Assembly (NCBI GenBank): GCA_001179505.1
Contig: CDMY01000104.1
Coordinates: forward strand, 1 to 64,000
Origin: Vitrella brassicaformis CCMP3155
Lineage: Eukaryota > Protista > Chromerida
DNA length: 64,000 nucleotides
Reading direction: 5' to 3'
The number at the start of each line of letters is the position of its first letter. The stretch's first letter is position 1. The notes below the pieces were generated by a model. The model made no database searches, had not been told where the DNA came from, and saw only the letters and a program-made list of their open reading frames with translations. Shown piece after piece: positions 3,416 through 28,136 of the stretch. Position numbers and translations under genes: made by a program.

Positions 3416-4660
3416 ATGCAGCAGCCTTGCCTCTTGGTCCTTGCTGGCCTTCTTGTGAGCGGCTATCTGATGTCCGTTCGTGGTGACCCTGCACCAGCTG
3501 CGGGAAGTGACACCTCGGTGACGACCCCTGCACCAGCTGCAGAAAATGACACCTCGGTGACGACCCCTGCACCAGCTGCAGAAAATGACACTTCGGTGAC
3601 GACCCCTGCACCAGCTGCAGAAAATGACACCTCGGTGACGACCCCTGCACCAGCTGCAGAAAATGACACCTCGGTGACGACCCCTGCACCAGCTGCGGGA
3701 AGTGACACCTCGGTGGCGGCGATTGAGGCGACGGAGGCAGACTTTGACGAACACATCAAGGGGAGTCCCCATGTGCTGGTCATGTTCTACGCGTCATGGT
3801 GTTTACCCTCCCAGCGGATGCTGCCTGTCTTCGACAACGTCACCCAGATCTTGGCTACACACGACCCTGCCGTCAAGCTGATCAAGATCGACTGTGCAGA
3901 CGGCACCTTCGACGGTTGGCTTGACCTCTGCGATGATGATGGCTACCATATCGATAGTGTTCCCACCTTCAAGCTCTTCACAGACGGCAGCGTGAAGGCG
4001 GCCGTCGAGCGGCCGTCAAGATACTGGATGAATGCCACGACTGCGCACGGCGGCAATTACGAGGGCGAGACGGGCGTCAACTTGATTGTCGACTGGGTGG
4101 ACGGGCAGCTGAACAACGTACGCCAAACACACACACAGGTGGATGGACGACCACCGATTGTCTGTCTGTGCGTGTGTCGTGCTGTGTGCAGGTGGATGGT
4201 CACAGCGACAAGGGCGGCAAGGGCGGGAACGGCCTGATGATCGCCGGTAGGTGGTGACCTTGGCTTTGGCACTCTGGAGGCTGACCCGACACACACAGAG
4301 GGAGATGTGTAGAGATGTGGAGGTGTCTGTATGTGTCTGTGTCAGCTATCGTGATATCGTTGGTTTTGTTCGCTTCTTTCATTGGGGCCTGTGTCATGAG
4401 ATACCTTTACTGGTCAGTCAGACAACACAACGGCGAGAATGAATGCACATCATCAACCCATCCCCTCCTCCTACCCTCGCCTGTCTGCCGTGTGGTGGTG
4501 GTGGTTCAGGGTAAGATTGCCGGGTGTGTGTCTGCGTGATGTGTGCAGCAAGGACAGCGCGCGGGGCTCCTGCATGATCCGTCAGCCGATGGCGCGGCAG
4601 GAGGGCTCCCCCAGCAGCCTCTCCACTTCATCATCGCGGCTGCCGTTACAACTGCCCTAG
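3416..4660 (+). CDS. Signal-peptide thioredoxin/PDI-like protein with CXXS site (WCLPS), N-terminal 13-aa glycosylation repeats and a C-terminal TM helix (3' end uncertain)
   Basis: ORF 3416 has a hydrophobic leader, repeats and a Trx fold (FDEHIK..VLVMFYASWCLPSQRMLPVF..VKLIKIDC..VPTFKLF). Spliced exon 4346-4412 gives AIVISLVLFASFIGACVMRYLY. Confidence 0.8.
3488..3716 (+). repeat. Coding tandem repeat, 39 bp x ~6 (PAPAAENDTSVTT)
   Basis: Near-perfect units cctgcaccagctgcagaaaatgacacctcggtgacgacc. Four units carry an N-D-T sequon. Confidence 0.95.
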
Positions 4661-19718: not shown

Positions 19719-21347
19719 CATGTTTGTTTAGGGCCGACACGCAGCACGAGCGCATGACGCTTGAGGCCAAGATCGCCGAGCTGACAGAGAAGACGGAGGA
19801 GGCACAGAGGAGGCAAGCCAACGAACTCAAACAGAGAGATAAACAGGTAAGTACCCTCACACCGACAACATATGCAGAGAGAGAGAGAGAGACGGACACA
19901 GAGAGAGAGGGAGAGAGAGACAAGCAAGAACAAACAAACACCTGACCTGCAGATGGCCGCCGACCGCGACGACTGGCAGCGAGAGTTCTCGGCCAAGCTG
20001 CGGAAGGAGCACAGTGACGCCATCGAGGAGATGAGGGCACAGATGGAGGAGGACAAGAAGAAGGAAATCGCTGCCGTGAGGGAGCAGCTGAAAGAGCAGA
20101 CCACGCGCATGCAGGACAGCCACGCCAGACACCTCAGCGCTGAGGTACGGTACATAGCCATTGTTATGTCTGTTTGATAGATAGACAGGGAGAGAAGGAG
20201 AGAAGGATTGATTGGCCGCACAATGTCATGTGTGTGTGTGTGTGTGTGTCTTCAGATGGATCGCGCCAAGAGAGAGTGGGCGGAGGAGAGAGCCGCCTTG
20301 CAGGAGCGAGTGCACGACACCGGGGCCAAGCTGCAGGTATGCCAACACCTACATACATCCATCTATTCATCCATCCATCTCTGTGTGTCTCCTGCCCATA
20401 TATATACGTGTATAGGCGTCAGTGCATGACATCAACGAGCTGAGAGAGAGGCTGGCGAAGGAAGAGGTCAGGGCACTGGAGGCCGAGAGAGAAAAGAGCA
20501 CCCTTGCGGACCGGCTCAAAGTGAGTGAGATGACACAGTACAGTCAGCACACACACATGATGTGTTTTGTGTGTGTGTGTGTGTGTGTCCACCGTGCAGT
20601 GTGTTGAGAGCGCCATGTCTACGGAGCAAAGTCGGCACGCCGAAAAGCTGCAGGCTGCAAAGCAACACTTCCAAGTAGTGACCCACACACACACATACTA
20701 GGCTAGGCGCATCGCTCTCGTGGACACATAGGCTGCGGAGGAGCGCCTCAAAACCGAGATGACTGAGCTGCAGGAATCCCTCGAGAGGGAACAGGTAAGA
20801 ACACACACACACGGACACGCACTTGGACACACACACGTGTGTCATTGTGTCGTTTGTCCACAGGAGCGTGCTGCGCGTGAATTGGACGAGCACCGGCAGG
20901 GCTCCGCCGAGACCCTCAAACGGCTGGAGGAGAAAGTCAGGGCGGCCGTCGACGAAAAGGTACGAATGTCTGTGTATTTATTGTGTCTCCATCCAGCACT
21001 CAATGCAAGTCAAGTTTTGATGCATGGTTGCATTGCAATGACGTGTTGCTTTGGTGGGGGGCAGGATCAGCTCATTGCGGATCTCTCCGACCAGCTCAAA
21101 GCTGCTGAGATAACAGTCAGTACTCACCTACACACACGGACGGCCACAGCACAGAACAGCACAGCACACTGACGGCTTCCTCTCTCTCTCCCTGTGTGTA
21201 TGTGTGTCTATATAGGAGGGTCAGCTGCGTGCCATGCTCGAGACGCAACGAGAAGAGCTACTGGGCACCATCATCACCCAACCCCCACACACACGCCCAC
21301 AGCCGCCCGCTCCAGCACGCAACAACCCCTACACACACGGTAAGTAA
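16375..21347 (+). CDS. CEP131: Centrosomal/ciliary coiled-coil protein CEP131 (AZI1)-like, multi-exon
   Basis: N-terminal IQ-like AAKTIQSFFR, then YESTLERHLRLIDRLLADKKELTKR, AEKARREAWEQQKKQEIK and TIKGLEPEIDRLMDKHRKE, which parallel CEP131 motifs. Long E/K/R coiled coil. Confidence 0.8.
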
Positions 21348-21765
21348 TATCGGTTGACGCTTTTCATGTGGTCCATGGATGGAAGGGGGTGTGTGTGTGT
21401 GTGTGTGGCTGCAGTGCCGCCGGTGGCGGTGGGCTCCCCTGGCCGGAGAGAGCGGGACAGACACAGACGAGGGTGAAACAAATTGGCGTGTTGAATGGCG
21501 TGGATCGGATGGCGTGTGTATGCTCTGCTCTGCTCTGCTCTGGTGTTTCTTGGCTGACCAATTGGTTCGGGCACAGACGGAGAGATCGCATTGATTGCAT
21601 TCCATATGATTATTAATAATCGGGAAGGACGGGAGTGTCTCAAATGCTATCTATGTGTGTCCGCTGTAAGTGGCACCTACGATAACGACCAATCTGTACA
21701 TCTCGTGGCGCGCGAGAGAAATAAAGGGAATATGCTCACACCCACACCCACACCCAGGATGATCA

Positions 21766-24700
21766 TCATGACAGAGGAAACCGCTGGACACACACACACA
21801 CGGAGAGAGAGAGAGAGAGAGAGAGAGATGCAGAGATCCGTGTTGTGTCTATGTGTGTGTGTACCTTCAAGAGTTTGCCGGGTTTGCCGCGGACATGAAC
21901 CACCGGACTGCGGTCCTCCCTCTGCACACACACACACACACCAACGAGTGCCCCCGTATGTGTCGGCCTAGCCACACACACACACACACACACACGTACC
22001 CGATCGCCGCGCTCTCGGTCGGAGGCCGTGCTCCTGTGATTCACGTGACTCTACCACACACACACACACACACGCACACACACAGATGCACCGTTTTGCG
22101 CCCATCCGCCCCCTTCCCCACCTTTGCACGTACCTCGCTCGTTGCGCGTGTGGGCGGCTCGTCCACCATGGCGGGCACTTGGAGCGCACGAGGCACATGA
22201 CGATGGTGATGAGACGACACATCCCGCTGCTCCTCCGTGGGGTTTTCTGGGGCCTCCCCGCCGCCATCGCCATCGCCGTAGAGCTTCACCATGTCGATCC
22301 TGCACACACATACACACATGTCCGTCCGTCCATTGATCCACCCACCCCTGCCCTGTGTGTTTGTTGACCGTGCGATGTTTCTGCCAGGGACGAGGAACGA
22401 TGCCCTCGGGCACATCCTGACGGAGGGGTGCTTCGGCCGCCGCACATACGCTGGCGGCAATGTGATCCTGTAGATGCGCGACGAGTAGTACCGATTCTCC
22501 TGCACCATACACACACACACACACACATGGATGGATGCATGGATGGATGGATGGATGGGGCCATTTGTGCGCCGGGGTGTGTGGGAAGGCACGCCTGCCT
22601 TTTTCCTGTGGATGGACAGCATCTTCAGCAGCGGTTTCCTCTGCCATGCCACCAAAGCGGAGATGGGCGTGGTTGCTACACAAACACACACACAGAGACA
22701 CACACACACACATATGGCTGGATGGATGGATTGACGCGCACAGGAAGAGGCTGCCTTACCCTTTGTGTGCATGGTGTGCCGCATGAGGTCGGTGAACTGC
22801 GTGCGCACGTGGCCCATGTGGTCTGGCGCCACCCTTTCAACACACACACACACGTGTGATCCGCATACACACACAGATGGATGGCCAGGCATAGCTCACC
22901 ATGGTGATATCTTCTTCGCCTCGACGGCCTTCCTCGTCAAGAGCACATCATCGTCCAGCGAACAGTCAGACAGCGCCCTCTCCTACACCCACACACACAC
23001 ACACATACACACACACACAGAGACACTCCCATGTGTGTGTGTGCGCGTGGTGTGTGTGCGGACCTCCTCCTCCAGCTGCTGCTGCTGCTGGGCGTGGGTG
23101 TGTGTCCGCTGCATGACGGTGTCGGGGTGTGGCGGTGTGGGCACCCAGTAGGGGTCATCGTGCAGCTGATCTGCGTGTGTGTCGCCTGTACAGCACGAGG
23201 AGGGCTGCAGCAGCAGCGTGTTGGTGTTGGTGTTGGTTGTGGTGGCTGTGGCGGTGGGAGAGCACTCCTCCATCGGATGAGGCATCGGGTGGTGCATCGG
23301 TGGGACGGGGCCGTCTGTTCTCCGCTTCTTGGCCGGCCCCTGCTGCTGCTGTCCGTGACTCTGCCACACACGCACACACACACATGGATGGATGGATAGA
23401 TGGATGTCTCGGTCTGAGCGCGTACGTGTGTTGCAAGAGCTGCTGCTGCTGCTGGGGGTGGCGGTGGGGGTGGTGGGATTGGTGGCACAGCCACAGGGAC
23501 CGGTTTGGACATGTCCTGCATCTCGTGGCTGCACGCTCCCCCTCCCCCGCCCCCCTGCTCGATGTCCATCGAGGCTGATGACGGTGTTGCCGGCTGCTGC
23601 TGCTGTTGTTGTTGGGGTGGAGGAGGTTGCCGCATCTTCATGTAGGCCGCGAAGGTGGCTGCACGGGACGGATGCATGAGTGCATCAGCCAACACACCAA
23701 CATGGGTGCGTGTTGGGGCTGCGCGTGTGCCACCATGTGCTGACTGACCTTCTGGCAGCACCCTTCGAAGCACATCGTCCGGCACACAAGACAGGGCGCC
23801 CTCGGACACTACACACACACACACATTGGCCATCCATTCCTGTGTGTGTGTGTGCATGTCTGTGTGCGTCTCTGTCTCTCTCTATCTTACTTGGCCCATG
23901 TGCAAGTGCGTAGTGTGTCGTGTGTCCCGTGTGTGTGGGCAACAGTGGCGAAGGCTTCTTGCCCCGCGCCACTGCTGATGACAATGGGAGGGGTGGAGAG
24001 GGCGAGGGGGGCTTCCTGCACCCACATGTGGCCAAACACACACACCGGACGGATGTGTGTGTGTGTGTGTGTGTACCGTTTTGGAGCATGGCCGTGTTTC
24101 TTGTCTGTCTCCGGCAGCAGCGGCACGCTCTTGTCTCGGTCGCGCACCTAAATGCAGTCCATCCATCCATCCATCCATCCATGTGTGTGTAAGTTCAGGT
24201 GAGGACGGACAGGTACCTTTATGAGCACAGTCCGCCTTTTCGGCGAGTCGGCCGTCTCCTCTCCTTCGCTGCATACATGGATAGATGTGATCACACACAC
24301 ACACGCACACACACAAATGGGGAAGATGGCTTCTCACACACACATATGAAGTGCGCACACACCTGCTCAGAGGCGACACGAGAGCCTCTCTCTCCTCCGC
24401 TGCCACCAACCACCCCACACACAGACACAGACACAGAGATGTATGTGTGCACTCGTGAGGGGCGGGGGTTGCTGCAGTCAGTTATAAACTGACCCGATAG
24501 CCGGCCCTCGATCCTTATTGAGGTTATCGGCTGAGCTTGCCCCGCCCTGCCAACACACACACACACACACACATGGGGGTCCACCCCTCTTGGCTGGTGG
24601 TTGCACCATACCATGGTCATTCTTCATTTCATTCAGTGATACTAACCTGAACGTGTGGATGACTGGCCCGCCGGCTTCGTCGGCCAGCACCCGAACGAAG

Positions 24701-25928
24701 CCCTTCTTGGTCACCTCTATGCCTAAACACACACCACACCACACACAGACAGACGCCACACACACACACACACAGACACAGACAAGAATGTGCGCGCACT
24801 GCAGGCGTGTTGGTGAGTGCAGTGCAGTGCTCTGCAGTGCACATGGCTGACCTTCCATCCAGGTGAGCATAGAGGGGATGATCCACACCAGGCAGCCTGC
24901 ACAGATCGATGGATGGATTATGTGTGTGGTGTGGTGTGGGTGGATGTGACACATGTGCAGCCACCGCACCGGCCGTGATGAGCGAGACCACACACGTGAC
25001 ACCCCTTCACACAGACACACACACACACACACACATATGGACACACACACATCCCCTCCCCGCACAGACATAGTACATTGCACAAAGGTGTGTGGGCCCG
25101 CACTGACTTGAGGAAGGACAGCAAGCCCATCGCGTGTGTCAAATGGGCATCGGTCAGCGCTGAACACACACACCACACATCACCCCCTCCATGAGTGTGA
25201 GTCAGTGTGTGTGTGTGTGTGTGGACGCACCGGTCATGAAGTGGGTCGTTCCGCAGAAGACTTCACACACACACAGACACACACACCCGTGCAGAGAGGG
25301 AGAGAGATAGCCCACCCTGTGGGTGTGGAGGCGTGGCCATGAAGCTCACATATAAACAGCATGAATGTGACGCCCAGCGTCAGCACCTCAACCTGGTCCT
25401 TGGCCGTCAACACCTACGCACGAGAGAGAGAGAGGGAGAGGGAGAAGGAGAGAGGTCAGTCAGTGCATCCGTCTGTGTGTGGTGTGTGTGTGTGCATGTG
25501 TCTGTGTGCCTGGTCGGCGAGCAGCTTCGAGAAGGGGTTGAACTCCGTCGCCATGCGGTACCTTTATCCATCCATCCACACACACTCGTCAGTCAATCCA
25601 TCCATGTGTGTGCGCACACACAGTCAGACACACACCCACATACACACACAGACGCACAGACGCACACACGTCAGGTAGGTAGGGTACCTGACGACGAAGA
25701 AGAAGATCTGAATGGGTATACTGACATAGGCAAAGCTCGTCAACAGGTCAAAGCCTGGCAAGGCAAGTCAACCACACACACACACACACACACACATGCA
25801 ATGAATGAATGAGTGCCCGACAAACAAACACAACACCCTTGTCTGTGTGTGTGTGTGTGTGTGACTGTGTGTCGGTAACCGTACTTACCGATTGTGAGGT
25901 GGAAGAGGTGTGGGCTGATCTGCTCCAT
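21766..25928 (-). CDS. Protein with an N-terminal ETR1-type ethylene-binding TM domain and a long non-kinase cytoplasmic tail, >20 small exons
   Basis: Exons 25928-25889, 25754-25688, 25561-25510, 25413-25350, 25260-25231, 25159-25108, 25004-24970 and 24896-24852 splice in phase to MEQISPHLFHLTIGFDLLTSFAYVSIPIQIFFFVVRYRMATEFNPFSKLLADQVLTAKDQVEVLTLGVTFMLFIFFCGTTHFMTALTDAHLTHAMGLLSFLKGVTCVVSLITAGCLVWIIPSMLTWMEG. Downstream exons continue in compatible phase to ~21766. Confidence 0.8.
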
Positions 25929-25977
25929 CAGACTCTGAGGCGATTGCGGCCTGAAGAGATGTCACAAACACTGTCCG

Positions 25978-26118
25978 CCTGTCTGTCTGTCTGTCTGTCT
26001 GTCTGTGCATCTGTCTGTCTGTCTGTCTGTGTGTCTGTCTGTCTGTGCATCTGTCTGTCTGTCTGTCTGTGTGTCTGTCTGTCTGTCTGTCTGTGTGTCT
26101 GTCTGTGCATCTGTGTGT
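25978..26118. repeat. Compound (TGTC/TCTG)n microsatellite in a 5' intron
   Basis: ~140 bp of tgtc/tctg units. Confidence 0.9.
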
Positions 26119-26411
26119 GACTTACCCGCCATCTCCCCCAAGAGTCAGAGTGCTCAGCCCTTCAGCAGCAGCAGTAGCTGATGCTGCAGCCATCTGACGC
26201 AGACTCATCATCACCATGATCACAATCACCAGCACGCACTTTGTCAACTGATAGCAAGATGCCACGAGGTGCGATGCCTTCCGACGCCGCCGAACGGCAT
26301 CTTATTTTCTCATCTCAATGAGTTTTTTTGCCCAAGGAACCTGCGAGCTTAGAGATGTTGCGAGCTGCGGGAAAGAGCTGCGGGAAAGTGGTCACTCGAC
26401 TGCAAACTACG

Positions 26412-26687
26412 ATGGCGAAGCCCTCTCACGTGCGGTTCAATGTGGGCGGGAAGGAGTTCTCCACCAGCAGGTCTGAGTCGGAGCGAGGAACGCAATCTTG
26501 CAGATCTTTTAGTGCATGCGATGCGATGCATGCGACGATAAAGATCTCTTTGTGTGTGTGCAGGACGACCATCAAGAAGTTCCCGAACTGTTTGCTCTCA
26601 AGGGTGGGGTAGAGAGGCAGGGCAGGGAGGACCGGACAGACATGCATGTGCTGTAGTGAGTGCTGTGTGGATGTCTGGATGGCATTG

Positions 26688-26725
<38 letters not shown>

Positions 26726-28136
26726 TGCAGATGATAGACGACCCCGAGCTGGACCAGACAGAGGCTCTCTACGGTACGGTGTGTCTGTCAGATCAGTCAG
26801 TCACACATAGCCAATCACTGCATGCGGTTGCTATGTGTGTATGTGTGTGTGTGTCGTCATTCGTCATGCGATGCAGTTGACGGCGACCCCGAGCTGTTCC
26901 CCTTCGTGCTGCAGTACATGCGTCACGGCCCGCCTGTCGCTCTCGACCCAAAGGCAGGCAAAGAAGCTGGGATGGGACCACCACGACACACCGCACCACA
27001 ACCACGGGTGGGCGGATGGATGCGTGTGTCTTATATTGCAGATCTCCGCCAATCGTGTGATCAAGGAGATGGTGGCCTACGGCCTGGAAGTCAGCAGGGA
27101 CAACTTTGAGGTCGAGCGACAGGTATGTAGGTACCTATGTAGAGTAGACACACACACACATGGGATGGGTGCTCGCACCGCACATGTGTGTGTGTATGTG
27201 TGTGTGTTTGATGTGTGTGCAGACGGACCACAGAGAAGCGATGTTCGAGCTGGCCAGAACCCTTGCGCTCGGTGAGTGAGTGACTGCATGGCTATCATAA
27301 GGCTGAAAGGCATCCATCCATCCATCCATGTGTGTGTGTGTGTGTGATGCGATGCGTGCAGGCCTGGTCAACAAGACGGTCAACGAATCAAGCGACTTCA
27401 AACTGGGTAGGTGACTCTACACACACCAAACACATCAGATGACGCAGGTAGGCATCTCTGTGTGTGTGTGTGTGTCAGGTGCTTTGCTGACGGAGTCGTG
27501 CCGCGTGCACGGGGGCGAGATAACGCAGCACCGACAGGCACGTAGACCACCACCCAGACACGCACGCACCCTCTTTGATGTGCCTGAGGATCACCCAGAC
27601 ACACACACACACCACACCACACCACACAACACACACACACGTGTGAGCAGACAAACAGACATAAGTGAAGTGGGTGTGCGTCTGTCTGTCTGTCTGTCTT
27701 TCTGTCTTTCTGCAGGTGTGTCAGGCGTCGCCCAGTATCTTCCTCGGGATGGTGGCTCTCGAGCTTCAGCGACTCCAAGCAGGTAAGGTAGCCTCTCTAC
27801 CCACACACACACACGCACACACACGCGTGCATCTCTCTCTCTCCTTGTTTGCATTGCATGTGTGTGTTTGATCGATCAGGTGTGCGCCACGTCTGGATCA
27901 CGCCCCACGGGATGGCCGAGCCCGACGTCTACTCGGTCATCAGCCGCAAGATCGACCCCGGCACGCCCATCAACACACACATGCTACCCTCGCCCAGCTA
28001 CCCACAGCCATCCACACCCACACTACCACCCCCTCCCCCTCTCCACAACGCCGCCACTCACACGCACACCCACATGCCGCAGCCGACCGCGCCGAGCACT
28101 TTGCCCAGCACGGCGGCCACGAGTGACAACAAGTGA
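26412..28136 (+). CDS. BTB/POZ (KCTD/T1-type) domain protein, multi-exon
   Basis: MAKPSHVRFNVGGKEFSTSR / TTIKKFPNCLLSR / ..DGDPELFPFVLQYMRHG / ..RVIKEMVAYGL; proline-rich last exon. Confidence 0.85.

What the first reader, a model, noticed from the sequence alone, without database searches (positions are those of the whole stretch)
21766..24851. The ethylene-binding domain appears fused to a non-kinase output: possible new receptor architecture
Seen: downstream exons continue in compatible phase, but I found no GAF, HisKA/HATPase (H, N, G boxes) or receiver motifs. Instead there is a short basic segment, an F-box-like helix (LSCVPDDVLRRVLP, ~23745-23800), polyQ/P linkers and a compact basic C-terminal block (PWVAPDHMGHVRTQFTDLMRH..WQRKPLLKMLSIHRKK..ENRYYSSRIYRITLPPAYVRRPKHPSVRMCPRASF). 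Established: plant and cyanobacterial receptors use GAF plus histidine kinase (with or without receiver). Inference: an ethylene sensor coupled directly to a nucleic-acid-binding or ubiquitin-adaptor output.
Basis: inference. Interest (0 to 1): 0.7.

Follow-up and report, generated by a model that had tools for sequence, protein, structure and literature searches.

The report
Kinase-less ethylene-sensor gene in Vitrella
A gene of the chromerid alga Vitrella joins an intact ethylene/copper-binding membrane domain to a long, mostly disordered tail with no kinase; the gene model is already public, and the proposed F-box or DNA-binding output is not supported.

Summary
The window's minus strand carries a 26-exon gene (26193-21766). 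Exon by exon it is identical to the public Vitrella brassicaformis protein CEL92723.1 / A0A0G4EBQ1 (711 aa), which UniRef already names [quoted passage not shown].

Residues 38-155 are a full ETR1_N domain (53 bits) with the Asp, Cys, His and Lys positions intact. The remaining ~550 residues give no GAF, HisKA, HATPase, receiver or F-box signal. A positive control worked: Flavobacterium relatives of the sensor show their kinase domains in the same scan.

A spliced cDNA-type contig confirms exons from 23475 to the 3' UTR. A sister-lineage genomic contig shows purifying selection on the tail. "One mRNA" therefore rests on the annotation, frame-consistent codon statistics and the compact exon-intron layout.

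The tail has no relatives beyond the sister lineage. The ubiquitin-adaptor and nucleic-acid-binding readings are unsupported.

The scan had already noted the genome's second, equally kinase-less sensor gene on other DNA. Verdict: a real new variant of a known kind, with unknown output.

The parts
21630..26193 (-). Whole transcription unit as far as shown: annotated CDS 26193-21766 (26 exons, 711 aa, = CEL92723.1) plus at least 136 nt of 3' UTR
   Evidence: Exon-by-exon identity to P0004; the cluster look-up names the public protein; transcript contig L005 reaches 21630
26126..26193 (-). E0, the annotated first coding exon (aa 1-22). Coding is doubtful; the real start may be the ATG at 25928-25926 in E1
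   Evidence: Codon log-likelihood is -34.5 in the annotated frame against +7.4 in another frame
24852..25950 (-). E1, E2, E2b and E3-E7: eight short exons encoding the ETR1-type ethylene/copper-binding domain (aa 23-158). Key positions are D46, Y53, I56, P57, I104, C107, H111 and K132
   Evidence: Pfam ETR1_N 53 bits, E 4e-14, aa 38-155, profile 2-96/97; alignment with Flavobacterium domains has the AY.SIP and FMLFIFFCG.TH columns invariant
25414..25509 (-). GC-AG intron after exon E2b
   Evidence: Donor is GC in the exon map; E2b codon score is +19 in the annotated frame. No transcript evidence was obtained
24647..24722 (-). E8, the juxtamembrane segment straight after helix 3 (aa 159-183), shared with the second sensor gene of this genome
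   Evidence: tblastn of P0004 against the paralogue locus aligns helix 3 plus this segment, E 6e-9; in the paralogue its first residues stand in the same open frame as helix 3. Codon score +24.5
23891..24546 (-). E9-E13: five short exons (aa 184-296) rich in charged residues and Pro/Ser, with basic clusters. No independent transcript evidence
   Evidence: Present in the public model. The annotated frame scores best in each exon. Introns are 61-100 nt, like the confirmed ones
23749..23808 (-). With the start of E15 it forms two short predicted helices
   Evidence: AlphaFold2 blocks 301-330 have pLDDT 76-85, helices 307-313 and 316-325. No F-box family at E<=10
23426..23658 (-). E15 (aa 317-394): polyQ, polyG, polyP and polyA low-complexity exon
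   Evidence: Its last 50 nt and the junction to E16 are in transcript contig L005, with the reading frame open to the contig's 5' end
23064..23360 (-). E16 (aa 395-493): KKRR cluster (about 23330-23319), a His/Met/Cys-rich stretch, polyQ
   Evidence: Transcript-confirmed. Against the sister lineage: 91% identity, and the only indels are in-frame, 6 and 9 nt
22900..22982 (-). E17 (aa 494-520): acidic/Leu-rich motif leading into the basic block
   Evidence: Transcript-confirmed; 99% identical to the sister lineage with no gaps
22369..22833 (-). E18-E20 (aa 521-614): the conserved basic block; the intron after E19 (22598-22500) is GC-AG
   Evidence: Transcript-confirmed, including the GC donor. 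The GC donor is kept in the sister lineage. Exons are 96-99% identical, with only two amino-acid changes across aa 494-614
21766..22299 (-). E21-E24 (aa 615-711): acidic/His-rich then basic end; stop TGA at 21768-21766
   Evidence: Transcript-confirmed. The same stop and the same splice sites are kept in the sister lineage
21630..21765 (-). 3' UTR, minimum extent
   Evidence: Contig L005 positions 1005-1140; 81% identical to the sister lineage with indels, unlike the exons

Best explanation
One minus-strand gene (public model CEL92723.1, 711 aa) encodes three parts.

1. A three-helix ETR1-type copper/ethylene-binding domain with the Asp, Cys, His and Lys positions intact.
2. A short juxtamembrane segment shared with the genome's second sensor gene.
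3. About 550 residues with no catalytic or known binding domain. They hold Pro/Gln/Ala/His-rich low-complexity runs, several basic NLS-like clusters, one confidently helical ~25-residue motif, and a basic C-terminal block that is almost unchanged in a sister lineage.

Shown:
- the exon structure;
- absence of GAF, kinase and receiver at profile sensitivity;
- splicing and expression of the 3' half;
- purifying selection on the tail.

Inferred:
- Sensor and tail lie on one mRNA.
- Ligand binding is passed through helix 3 and the juxtamembrane segment.
- The signal is read out non-catalytically, by partner proteins that bind short motifs in the disordered cytosolic tail. This resembles plant receptors, which act through bound CTR1 and EIN2 rather than by phosphotransfer (own knowledge).
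- Release of the basic C-terminal part towards the nucleus is possible but is pure inference.
For: - Gene model: all 26 exons translate to P0004 with no mismatch, and splice sites are canonical apart from two GC donors. The public entry is named for the ETR1_N domain.
- Sensor: ETR1_N scores 53 bits against a cut-off of 27. The AY.SIP and FMLFIFFCG.TH columns are invariant against Flavobacterium sensor domains. The roles of Asp25, Cys65, His69 and Lys91 are described in PMC10266040.
- No kinase: Pfam is blank for aa 150-711. No HATPase_c, HisKA, REC or GAF hit lies near either sensor locus in six-frame scans of the whole genome. hhalign against the relatives' PAS-HisKA-HATPase region gives probability 0.06%. 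Positive control: the same Pfam scan finds PAS, HisKA and HATPase_c in the Flavobacterium proteins.
- The tail is real coding sequence. The spliced contig L005 covers 23475-21630. Against the sister lineage, exons are 96-100% identical and introns 54-89%. There are 20 synonymous and 13 non-synonymous codon changes; indels are in frame; all splice sites and the stop are kept.
- Continuity from sensor to tail. The annotated frame scores best in 8 of 8 linking exons. E8 is homologous to the paralogue's segment after helix 3, whose first residues stand in the same open frame as that helix. No gap between exons from E7 to E15 exceeds 129 nt. The ORF is open at the 5' end of L005.
- Disorder: AlphaFold2 gives the tail pLDDT of about 30-50 (10-residue block means) apart from aa 301-330. 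The ESM Atlas model has mean pLDDT 0.41.
Against: - No transcript evidence was obtained for the junctions E7 to E15. A word search, a DNA pattern scan and a peptide-pattern scan were all blank.
- Coding statistics for E9, E10 and E13-E15 are weak in absolute terms.
- The tail has no relatives outside its own lineage, so no function can be transferred to it.
- Single-sequence structure prediction cannot exclude a fold.
- The sensor might act on its own, making the tail a regulator rather than an output.
- Stand-alone ETR1_N proteins seem to exist in bacteria and phages (a lead only).
Confidence: 0.6

Rival explanations
1. The sensor works on its own and the tail is not an output. In this reading the three-helix domain is a copper-dependent ethylene-responsive membrane module, for example a Ca2+-permeable pore as recently claimed for plant ETR1/ERS1, or a copper-handling protein. 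The disordered tail only tunes its stability, localisation or metal supply.
For: - A 2025 preprint reports that ETR1, ERS1 and algal homologues are Ca2+ permeable and that ethylene raises this permeability (10.1101/2025.10.20.683334).
- The nearest Atlas clusters by features are 107-135-aa proteins carrying only ETR1_N, from bacteria and phages (scores 0.88, a lead only).
- The two Vitrella paralogues share only the sensor and the juxtamembrane segment, not the tails.
- The tail is rich in His, Met and Cys motifs (seen directly).
Against: - The C-terminal block is under strong purifying selection: two amino-acid changes across aa 494-614 while silent sites diverged. That argues for a specific function of the tail.
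- The preprint does not show that the membrane domain alone is sufficient.
- His/Thr runs may simply derive from the CA/TG microsatellites that pervade this genome.
Confidence: 0.22
2. The public model merges two genes. A short sensor gene would end soon after E8, and a separate downstream gene would encode the tail.
For: - The only transcript contig found starts at 23475, and its called ORF begins at an internal Met.
- Nothing was found for the sensor-proximal exons in the word, pattern or peptide scans.
- Coding scores of E9, E10 and E13-E15 are weak.
Against: - The ORF is open at the 5' end of L005, which breaks inside a polyP/polyA-coding repeat where assemblies typically fail.
- The annotated frame is the best in 8 of 8 linking exons.
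- No non-exon interval between E7 and E15 exceeds 129 nt, which leaves no room for a 3' UTR, spacer and promoter.
- The scans state that records near this genome may be left out, so their blanks are weak evidence.
Confidence: 0.13
3. One reading: the tail is a ubiquitin adaptor (F-box) or a nucleic-acid-binding domain directly coupled to the sensor.
For: - The E14 motif has an L..(V)P.(D)(V)L..(V)L pattern like the first F-box helix and is predicted helical with pLDDT 76-85.
- The C-terminal block is basic: 21 K/R against 10 D/E in aa 521-640.
- Several KKRR/PKRK-type clusters are present.
Against: - No F-box or F-box-like profile matches at E<=10.
- Only about 25 structured residues precede polyP/polyQ.
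- The basic block has no Pfam, PDB-sequence or library relatives and models at pLDDT 32.
- The apparent repeat of the motif in E17 is not significant: 679 of 5000 shuffles score as well.
Confidence: 0.05

Closest known systems
Plant ETR1/ERS1 and cyanobacterial SynEtr1 ethylene receptors
   Same: An N-terminal three-helix ethylene/copper-binding domain. Equivalents of Asp25, Tyr32, Ile35, Pro36, Ile62, Cys65, His69 and Lys91 are present (D46, Y53, I56, P57, I104, C107, H111, K132). Helix 3 is in the same register up to the IIP motif. The ETR1 side of this comparison is recalled from memory; residue roles come from PMC10266040 and PMC6682694.
   Different: There is no GAF or cyanobacteriochrome domain, no HisKA/HATPase_c and no receiver. 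The loop between helices 1 and 2 is about 20 residues longer. The paired N-terminal cysteines of plant receptors are absent. The cytosolic part is a lineage-specific disordered tail.
Flavobacterium ETR1_N-PAS-HisKA-HATPase_c kinases (loci L007-L010)
   Same: These are the closest sensor relatives the pattern scan reached, at 29-36% identity. They share the identical helix-2 string FMLFIFFCG(T/A)TH.
   Different: They are ordinary two-component kinases of 521-542 aa; in L007 an ORF that looks like a response regulator follows (read by eye, no family scan). The Vitrella tail shows no similarity to their output part.
Second Vitrella sensor gene (G000:C553, about 317.5-318.1 kb, minus strand)
   Same: It has the ETR1_N exons and the segment straight after helix 3.
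   Different: Its downstream sequence shows no similarity to this tail.
Stand-alone ETR1_N proteins of bacteria and phages (ESM Atlas clusters, 107-135 aa)
   Same: A sensor domain without a kinase.
   Different: They have no tail at all. This is only a feature-space lead (score 0.88) and was not aligned here.
EIN2 of plants (a functional analogy only)
   Same: A membrane domain followed by a long hydrophilic tail with a nuclear-localisation signal that is cleaved off and carries the ethylene signal onward (own knowledge).
   Different: EIN2's membrane part is NRAMP-like and does not bind ethylene. There is no sequence similarity. Cleavage of the Vitrella tail is untested.

Membership tests
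ETR1_N ethylene-binding domain (Pfam PF25487) | Profile match above the curated cut-off over the whole domain | tested here: met
   53 bits against a cut-off of 27, E 4.1e-14, aa 38-155, profile 2-96 of 97
ETR1_N ethylene-binding domain (Pfam PF25487) | Cys and His one helical turn apart in helix 2 (the copper ligands Cys65 and His69) | tested here: met
   C107 and H111 in ...FFCGTTH...; these columns are invariant in the alignment with Flavobacterium domains. Their role is described in PMC10266040
ETR1_N ethylene-binding domain (Pfam PF25487) | Helix-1 Asp (Asp25) and helix-3 Lys (Lys91), the coupled pair | tested here: met
   D46 lies 7 residues before Y53 of AY.SIP, and K132 lies 19 residues before P151 of IIP. 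Both spacings equal those in ETR1. ETR1 itself was not available by reference, so its spacings are recalled from memory; the roles come
ETR1_N ethylene-binding domain (Pfam PF25487) | Saturable binding of copper(I) and ethylene | not testable with these tools
   Needs a 14C-ethylene binding assay of aa 31-185 expressed in yeast
Canonical ethylene receptor (sensor + GAF + histidine-kinase-like domain, with or without receiver) | GAF domain after the sensor | tested here: not met
   No GAF family at E<=10 in P0004. The genome-wide GAF scan hits only contigs C428 and C964
Canonical ethylene receptor (sensor + GAF + histidine-kinase-like domain, with or without receiver) | HisKA and HATPase_c (or degenerate kinase-like) domains | tested here: not met
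   Pfam is blank. There are no six-frame hits on C104 or C553. hhalign against the relatives' kinase region gives probability 0.06%. Positive control
Canonical ethylene receptor (sensor + GAF + histidine-kinase-like domain, with or without receiver) | Receiver domain (optional in the family) | tested here: not met
   None in P0004. The only hit on C104 is weak (E 0.41) and lies about 150 kb away
F-box proteins | Match to an F-box or F-box-like profile over about 45 residues (three helices) | tested here: not met
   No such family at E<=10 for P0004 or for aa 300-420. Only two short helices (307-313, 316-325) are modelled before polyP/polyQ
F-box proteins | Binding to Skp1 | not testable with these tools
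   Needs a pull-down or two-hybrid assay
Known nucleic-acid-binding domains | Profile or fold match of the basic C-terminal block | tested here: not met
   Pfam and PDB sequence searches are blank. The library of 1.84 billion representatives gives only its own transcript and the sister lineage. Models have pLDDT 32 and 0.41, too poor for a fold search

The most novel reading that the evidence does not exclude
The sensor and the signal carrier are one polypeptide. In this reading, copper/ethylene binding in the membrane domain triggers cleavage and nuclear entry of the basic, NLS-bearing C-terminal part: an EIN2-like logic fused directly to the receptor. Alternatively, binding gates Ca2+ entry through the three-helix domain. 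Either way an alveolate would sense ethylene, or another copper-binding small ligand, with no two-component or CTR1-type kinase at all.
Probability: 0.1. Interest if true: 0.8.

Novelty: new variant of a known kind. Interest (0 to 1): 0.5.

Why it matters
Ethylene receptors are taught as sensor plus GAF plus kinase-like domain. The eukaryote-wide survey that reported the first ethylene-receptor homologues in the stramenopile-alveolate-rhizarian group searched only for kinase domains. It listed seven Vitrella kinases, none with this sensor (PMC6324907).

Vitrella has two genes with an intact sensor and no kinase behind it. The domain can therefore be kept under selection with a quite different, non-enzymatic cytosolic part. 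That gives a natural test case for two questions: how the three-helix domain passes on a signal without GAF or kinase, and whether it has an activity of its own.

It is also of interest because chromerids are the photosynthetic relatives of apicomplexan parasites.

The value is limited for two reasons. The gene model is already public, and the tail is an orphan, mostly disordered sequence whose function cannot be read from sequence.

Tried and rejected
No place was reported as human-like.
- Word searches with stop-free genomic pieces were blank. The later look-up explains this: the public protein is 711 aa, outside the length filter.
- Word search with the sensor region of P0004 was blank.
- Metagenome scans: an exact 28-nt pattern from E8 and a peptide-pattern scan with aa 125-350 found nothing. 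The tool warns that records close to this genome may be left out, so this is not evidence of absence.
I redid it with coordinates only.
- My first hand model differed from the public one in four places: a longer E2 instead of exon E2b, GT donors for E19 and E20, and a start at the ATG at 25928, so without exon E0. The transcript contig (for E19 and E20) and the public model (for all three) corrected it.
- The apparent internal repeat of the E14 motif in E17 is not significant (679 of 5000 shuffles).
- Fold searches were not run. Both AlphaFold2 models of the tail are below pLDDT 50, and the Atlas structure neighbours have TM <= 0.31.
- Pfam on the flanking plus-strand exon pieces gave nothing usable.
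- Joined step left out: I sent no self-joined spliced model to any search tool. Exons were searched by reference until the public protein P0004 was returned and could be cited by id.
Full report
WHAT THE SEQUENCE IS

The window is contig C104 of a 72.7-Mb, 1064-contig genome. The cluster look-up identifies the gene product as a protein of Vitrella brassicaformis CCMP3155.

The region is typical of this genome: short exons with G+C-rich third codon positions. Of the introns, 21 are 61-103 nt long; the other four are 129, 134, 126 and 96 nt. Many carry (TG)n tracts just before the acceptor.

On the plus strand, exon-like pieces of other genes end near 21.17 kb and begin near 26.4 kb. Whatever lies on the minus strand is therefore confined to about 21.2-26.3 kb.

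GENE MODEL

I first built the exon chain by hand from GT/AG sites and phases.

A search of the C-terminal stop-free piece against 1.84 billion representative proteins returned two real matches:
- P0001, a spliced 296-aa protein;
- P0002, an unspliced 170-aa protein from a related organism.

The 90%-identity cluster of P0001 also holds P0004. P0004 is CEL92723.1 / UniRef100_A0A0G4EBQ1, 711 aa, which UniRef names [quoted passage not shown].

All 26 exons, translated one by one in their phases, reproduce P0004 exactly. The exons span 26193-21766 on the minus strand. Every acceptor is AG. Donors are GT except two GC, after E2b and after E19.

Minor corrections:
- E19 ends at ...HRKK through a GC donor.
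- E20 runs on to ...GRNIAR.

TRANSCRIPT EVIDENCE

P0001 comes from a 1140-nt JGI record (sample 3300017297), fetched as locus L005.

L005 aligns to the window at 99.7-100% identity in ten blocks, from 23475 to 21630. This confirms nine junctions from E15/E16 to E23/E24, the GC-AG intron after E19, the stop codon and at least 136 nt of 3' UTR.

The reading frame is open right up to the 5' end of L005. The contig breaks inside the polyP/polyA-coding repeat of E15. P0001 therefore starts at an internal Met only because the contig is truncated.

I found no transcript for the junctions between the sensor and 23475:
- a word search, a DNA pattern scan and a peptide-pattern scan were blank;
- the scans warn that records near this genome may be left out.

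IS THE LINKING PART CODING AND CONTINUOUS?

Three independent lines say yes.

1. Codon statistics. I trained a codon model on the sensor exons and the transcript-confirmed exons. In all eight unconfirmed exons E8-E15, the annotated frame scores best of the three. The scores are strong for E8, E11 and E12, and weak in absolute terms for E9, E10 and E13-E15.
2. Paralogue homology. E8 is homologous to the segment that follows helix 3 in the genome's second sensor gene. There its first residues stand in the same open frame as helix 3, ahead of a 19-residue unaligned stretch. E8 therefore belongs to the sensor gene.
3. No room for a gene boundary. Between E7 and E15, no interval outside exons exceeds 129 nt, and the intervals look like the confirmed introns. 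There is no space for a 3' UTR, a spacer and a promoter.

I put "one gene" at about 0.85. It is not proven.

THE TAIL IS UNDER SELECTION

P0002 comes from an ENA metagenome contig (ERZ893784), fetched as locus L006. It is collinear with window 23361-19946 at 87% identity.

| Feature | Identity to L006 | Gaps |
|---|---|---|
| Exons E17-E21, E23, E24 | 96-100% | none |
| Exon E22 | 92% | none |
| Exon E16 | 91% | two in-frame deletions, 6 and 9 nt, in repeats |
| Introns | 54-89% | many indels |
| 3' UTR | 81% | indels present |

(Values.)

Across 318 codons there are 20 synonymous and 13 non-synonymous differences. All splice sites, the GC donor and the stop codon are conserved. The stretch aa 494-614 has only two amino-acid changes.

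WHAT THE PROTEIN CONTAINS

Pfam finds one family only: ETR1_N, 53 bits, aa 38-155, covering the whole profile.

The sequence has these positions, with the corresponding ETR1 residue in brackets:
- D46 (Asp25), Y53, I56, P57 in helix 1;
- I104, C107 (Cys65) and H111 (His69) in helix 2;
- K132 (Lys91) in helix 3.

The roles of Asp25, Cys65, His69 and Lys91 are set out in PMC10266040. [quoted passage not shown] The alignment to ETR1 itself is from memory.

The alignment to four Flavobacterium sensor domains was made here. It shows the AY.SIP and FMLFIFFCG.TH columns invariant, and a loop between helices 1 and 2 that is about 20 residues longer in Vitrella.

For aa 150-711, Pfam at E<=10 and a PDB sequence search give nothing meaningful.

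- Six-frame scans of the whole genome detect the expected handful of kinase loci elsewhere. None lies on C104 within 150 kb of the gene, and none lies on C553.
- The Flavobacterium relatives score for PAS, HisKA and HATPase_c in the same Pfam scan, which serves as a positive control.
- hhalign of their output region against the Vitrella tail gives probability 0.06%.
- The survey of eukaryotic histidine kinases lists seven kinases for Vitrella and reports ethylene-receptor homologues in this supergroup only for a diatom (PMC6324907). That fits sensor genes that its kinase-based search could not see.

THE PROPOSED OUTPUTS

F-box. The E14 motif, with the start of E15, is the only part of the tail modelled with confidence. 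pLDDT is 76-85 for aa 301-330, with helices at 307-313 and 316-325. No F-box profile matches it. The structured stretch is too short for an F-box. Its apparent repeat in E17 is not significant.

Nucleic-acid binding. The basic block (aa 519-614):
- has no relatives beyond its own lineage;
- models at pLDDT 32;
- has Atlas structural neighbours with TM <= 0.31.

I therefore ran no fold search on it. Nothing supports a ubiquitin-adaptor or nucleic-acid-binding domain.

What can be said is compositional. The tail has several KKRR/PKRK-type basic clusters, His/Met/Cys-rich stretches, and polyQ, polyP and polyA runs. Charge changes along it: mixed (aa 156-335), acidic (336-520), then basic (521-711).

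MECHANISM

The best-supported reading is a membrane sensor whose output is non-catalytic. The disordered cytosolic tail would present short motifs to partner proteins, with helix 3 and the conserved juxtamembrane segment as the link.

This step is inferred. It leans on two things: plant receptors also signal through bound partners rather than phosphotransfer (own knowledge), and the tail is under strong selection.

Two further possibilities are open:
- Release of the basic C-terminal part, an EIN2-like logic.
- An activity of the three-helix domain itself. A 2025 preprint claims Ca2+ permeability for ETR1/ERS1. Stand-alone ETR1_N proteins seem to exist in bacteria and phages (a lead only).

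NOVELTY

The gene model and its domain name are public. I checked that partly myself.

I found no paper that discusses a kinase-less ethylene-binding-domain protein in an alveolate. It is a new variant of a known kind: real, conserved and partly shown to be expressed, but with an orphan tail and an unknown output.

PROCEDURE NOTES

- No self-joined spliced model was sent to any search tool. Exons were searched by reference until P0004 became available by id.
- No stretch was reported as human-like.

Noticed in passing
G000:C553, about 317,543-318,088 (minus strand); loci L001, L002, L004: A second ETR1_N gene in the same genome. It shares the sensor and the segment just after helix 3 with this gene, but nothing further downstream. 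No kinase domain lies anywhere on its 339-kb contig.
   Followed up: partly
window 25414-25509 and 22500-22598 (minus strand): Two GC-AG introns in one gene. The second is confirmed by the transcript contig, and its GC donor is conserved in the sister lineage.
   Followed up: yes
window 26126-26193 (minus strand): The annotated first coding exon has a strongly negative codon score in its frame. The real start codon may be the ATG at 25928-25926, which would give a 681-aa protein.
   Followed up: partly
window 23659-23748 (minus strand): The intron between E14 and E15 is 90 nt long, in frame and free of stops, so retaining it would add 30 residues without breaking the protein.
   Followed up: no
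L006 (ENA ERZ893784, contig k147_1258667), collinear with window 23361-19946: A metagenome holds a sister lineage of this organism at 87% genomic identity. It is useful for telling exons from introns across this genome, and it also covers the 3' end of the convergent plus-strand neighbour.
   Followed up: partly
L007-L010 (four Flavobacterium genomes), match at 4001-4279 of each locus: Flavobacterium ETR1_N-PAS-HisKA-HATPase_c kinases carry the same helix-2 string (FMLFIFFCG, then T or A, then TH) as the Vitrella protein. In L007 an ORF that looks like a response regulator follows. The scan was pattern-limited, so this says nothing firm about origin.
   Followed up: partly
ESM Atlas clusters: The nearest clusters by protein-language-model features are 107-135-aa proteins with only an ETR1_N domain, many from phages (Uroviricota). 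Stand-alone ethylene-binding domains in viruses would merit their own look.
   Followed up: no
window 23262-23297 (minus strand; aa 416-427) and other tail segments: His/Met/Cys-rich stretches in the tail resemble copper-binding motifs of copper transporters. They could equally be by-products of CA/TG microsatellites. In the sister lineage one Met becomes Leu and one Pro becomes His here.
   Followed up: no
window 19872-21172 (+) and 26328-27275 (+): These are flanking plus-strand genes. One is a coiled-coil-like exon series converging on this gene's 3' end. The other is a divergent gene whose exons look BTB/KCTD-like by eye. Pfam on single exon pieces confirmed neither.
   Followed up: partly
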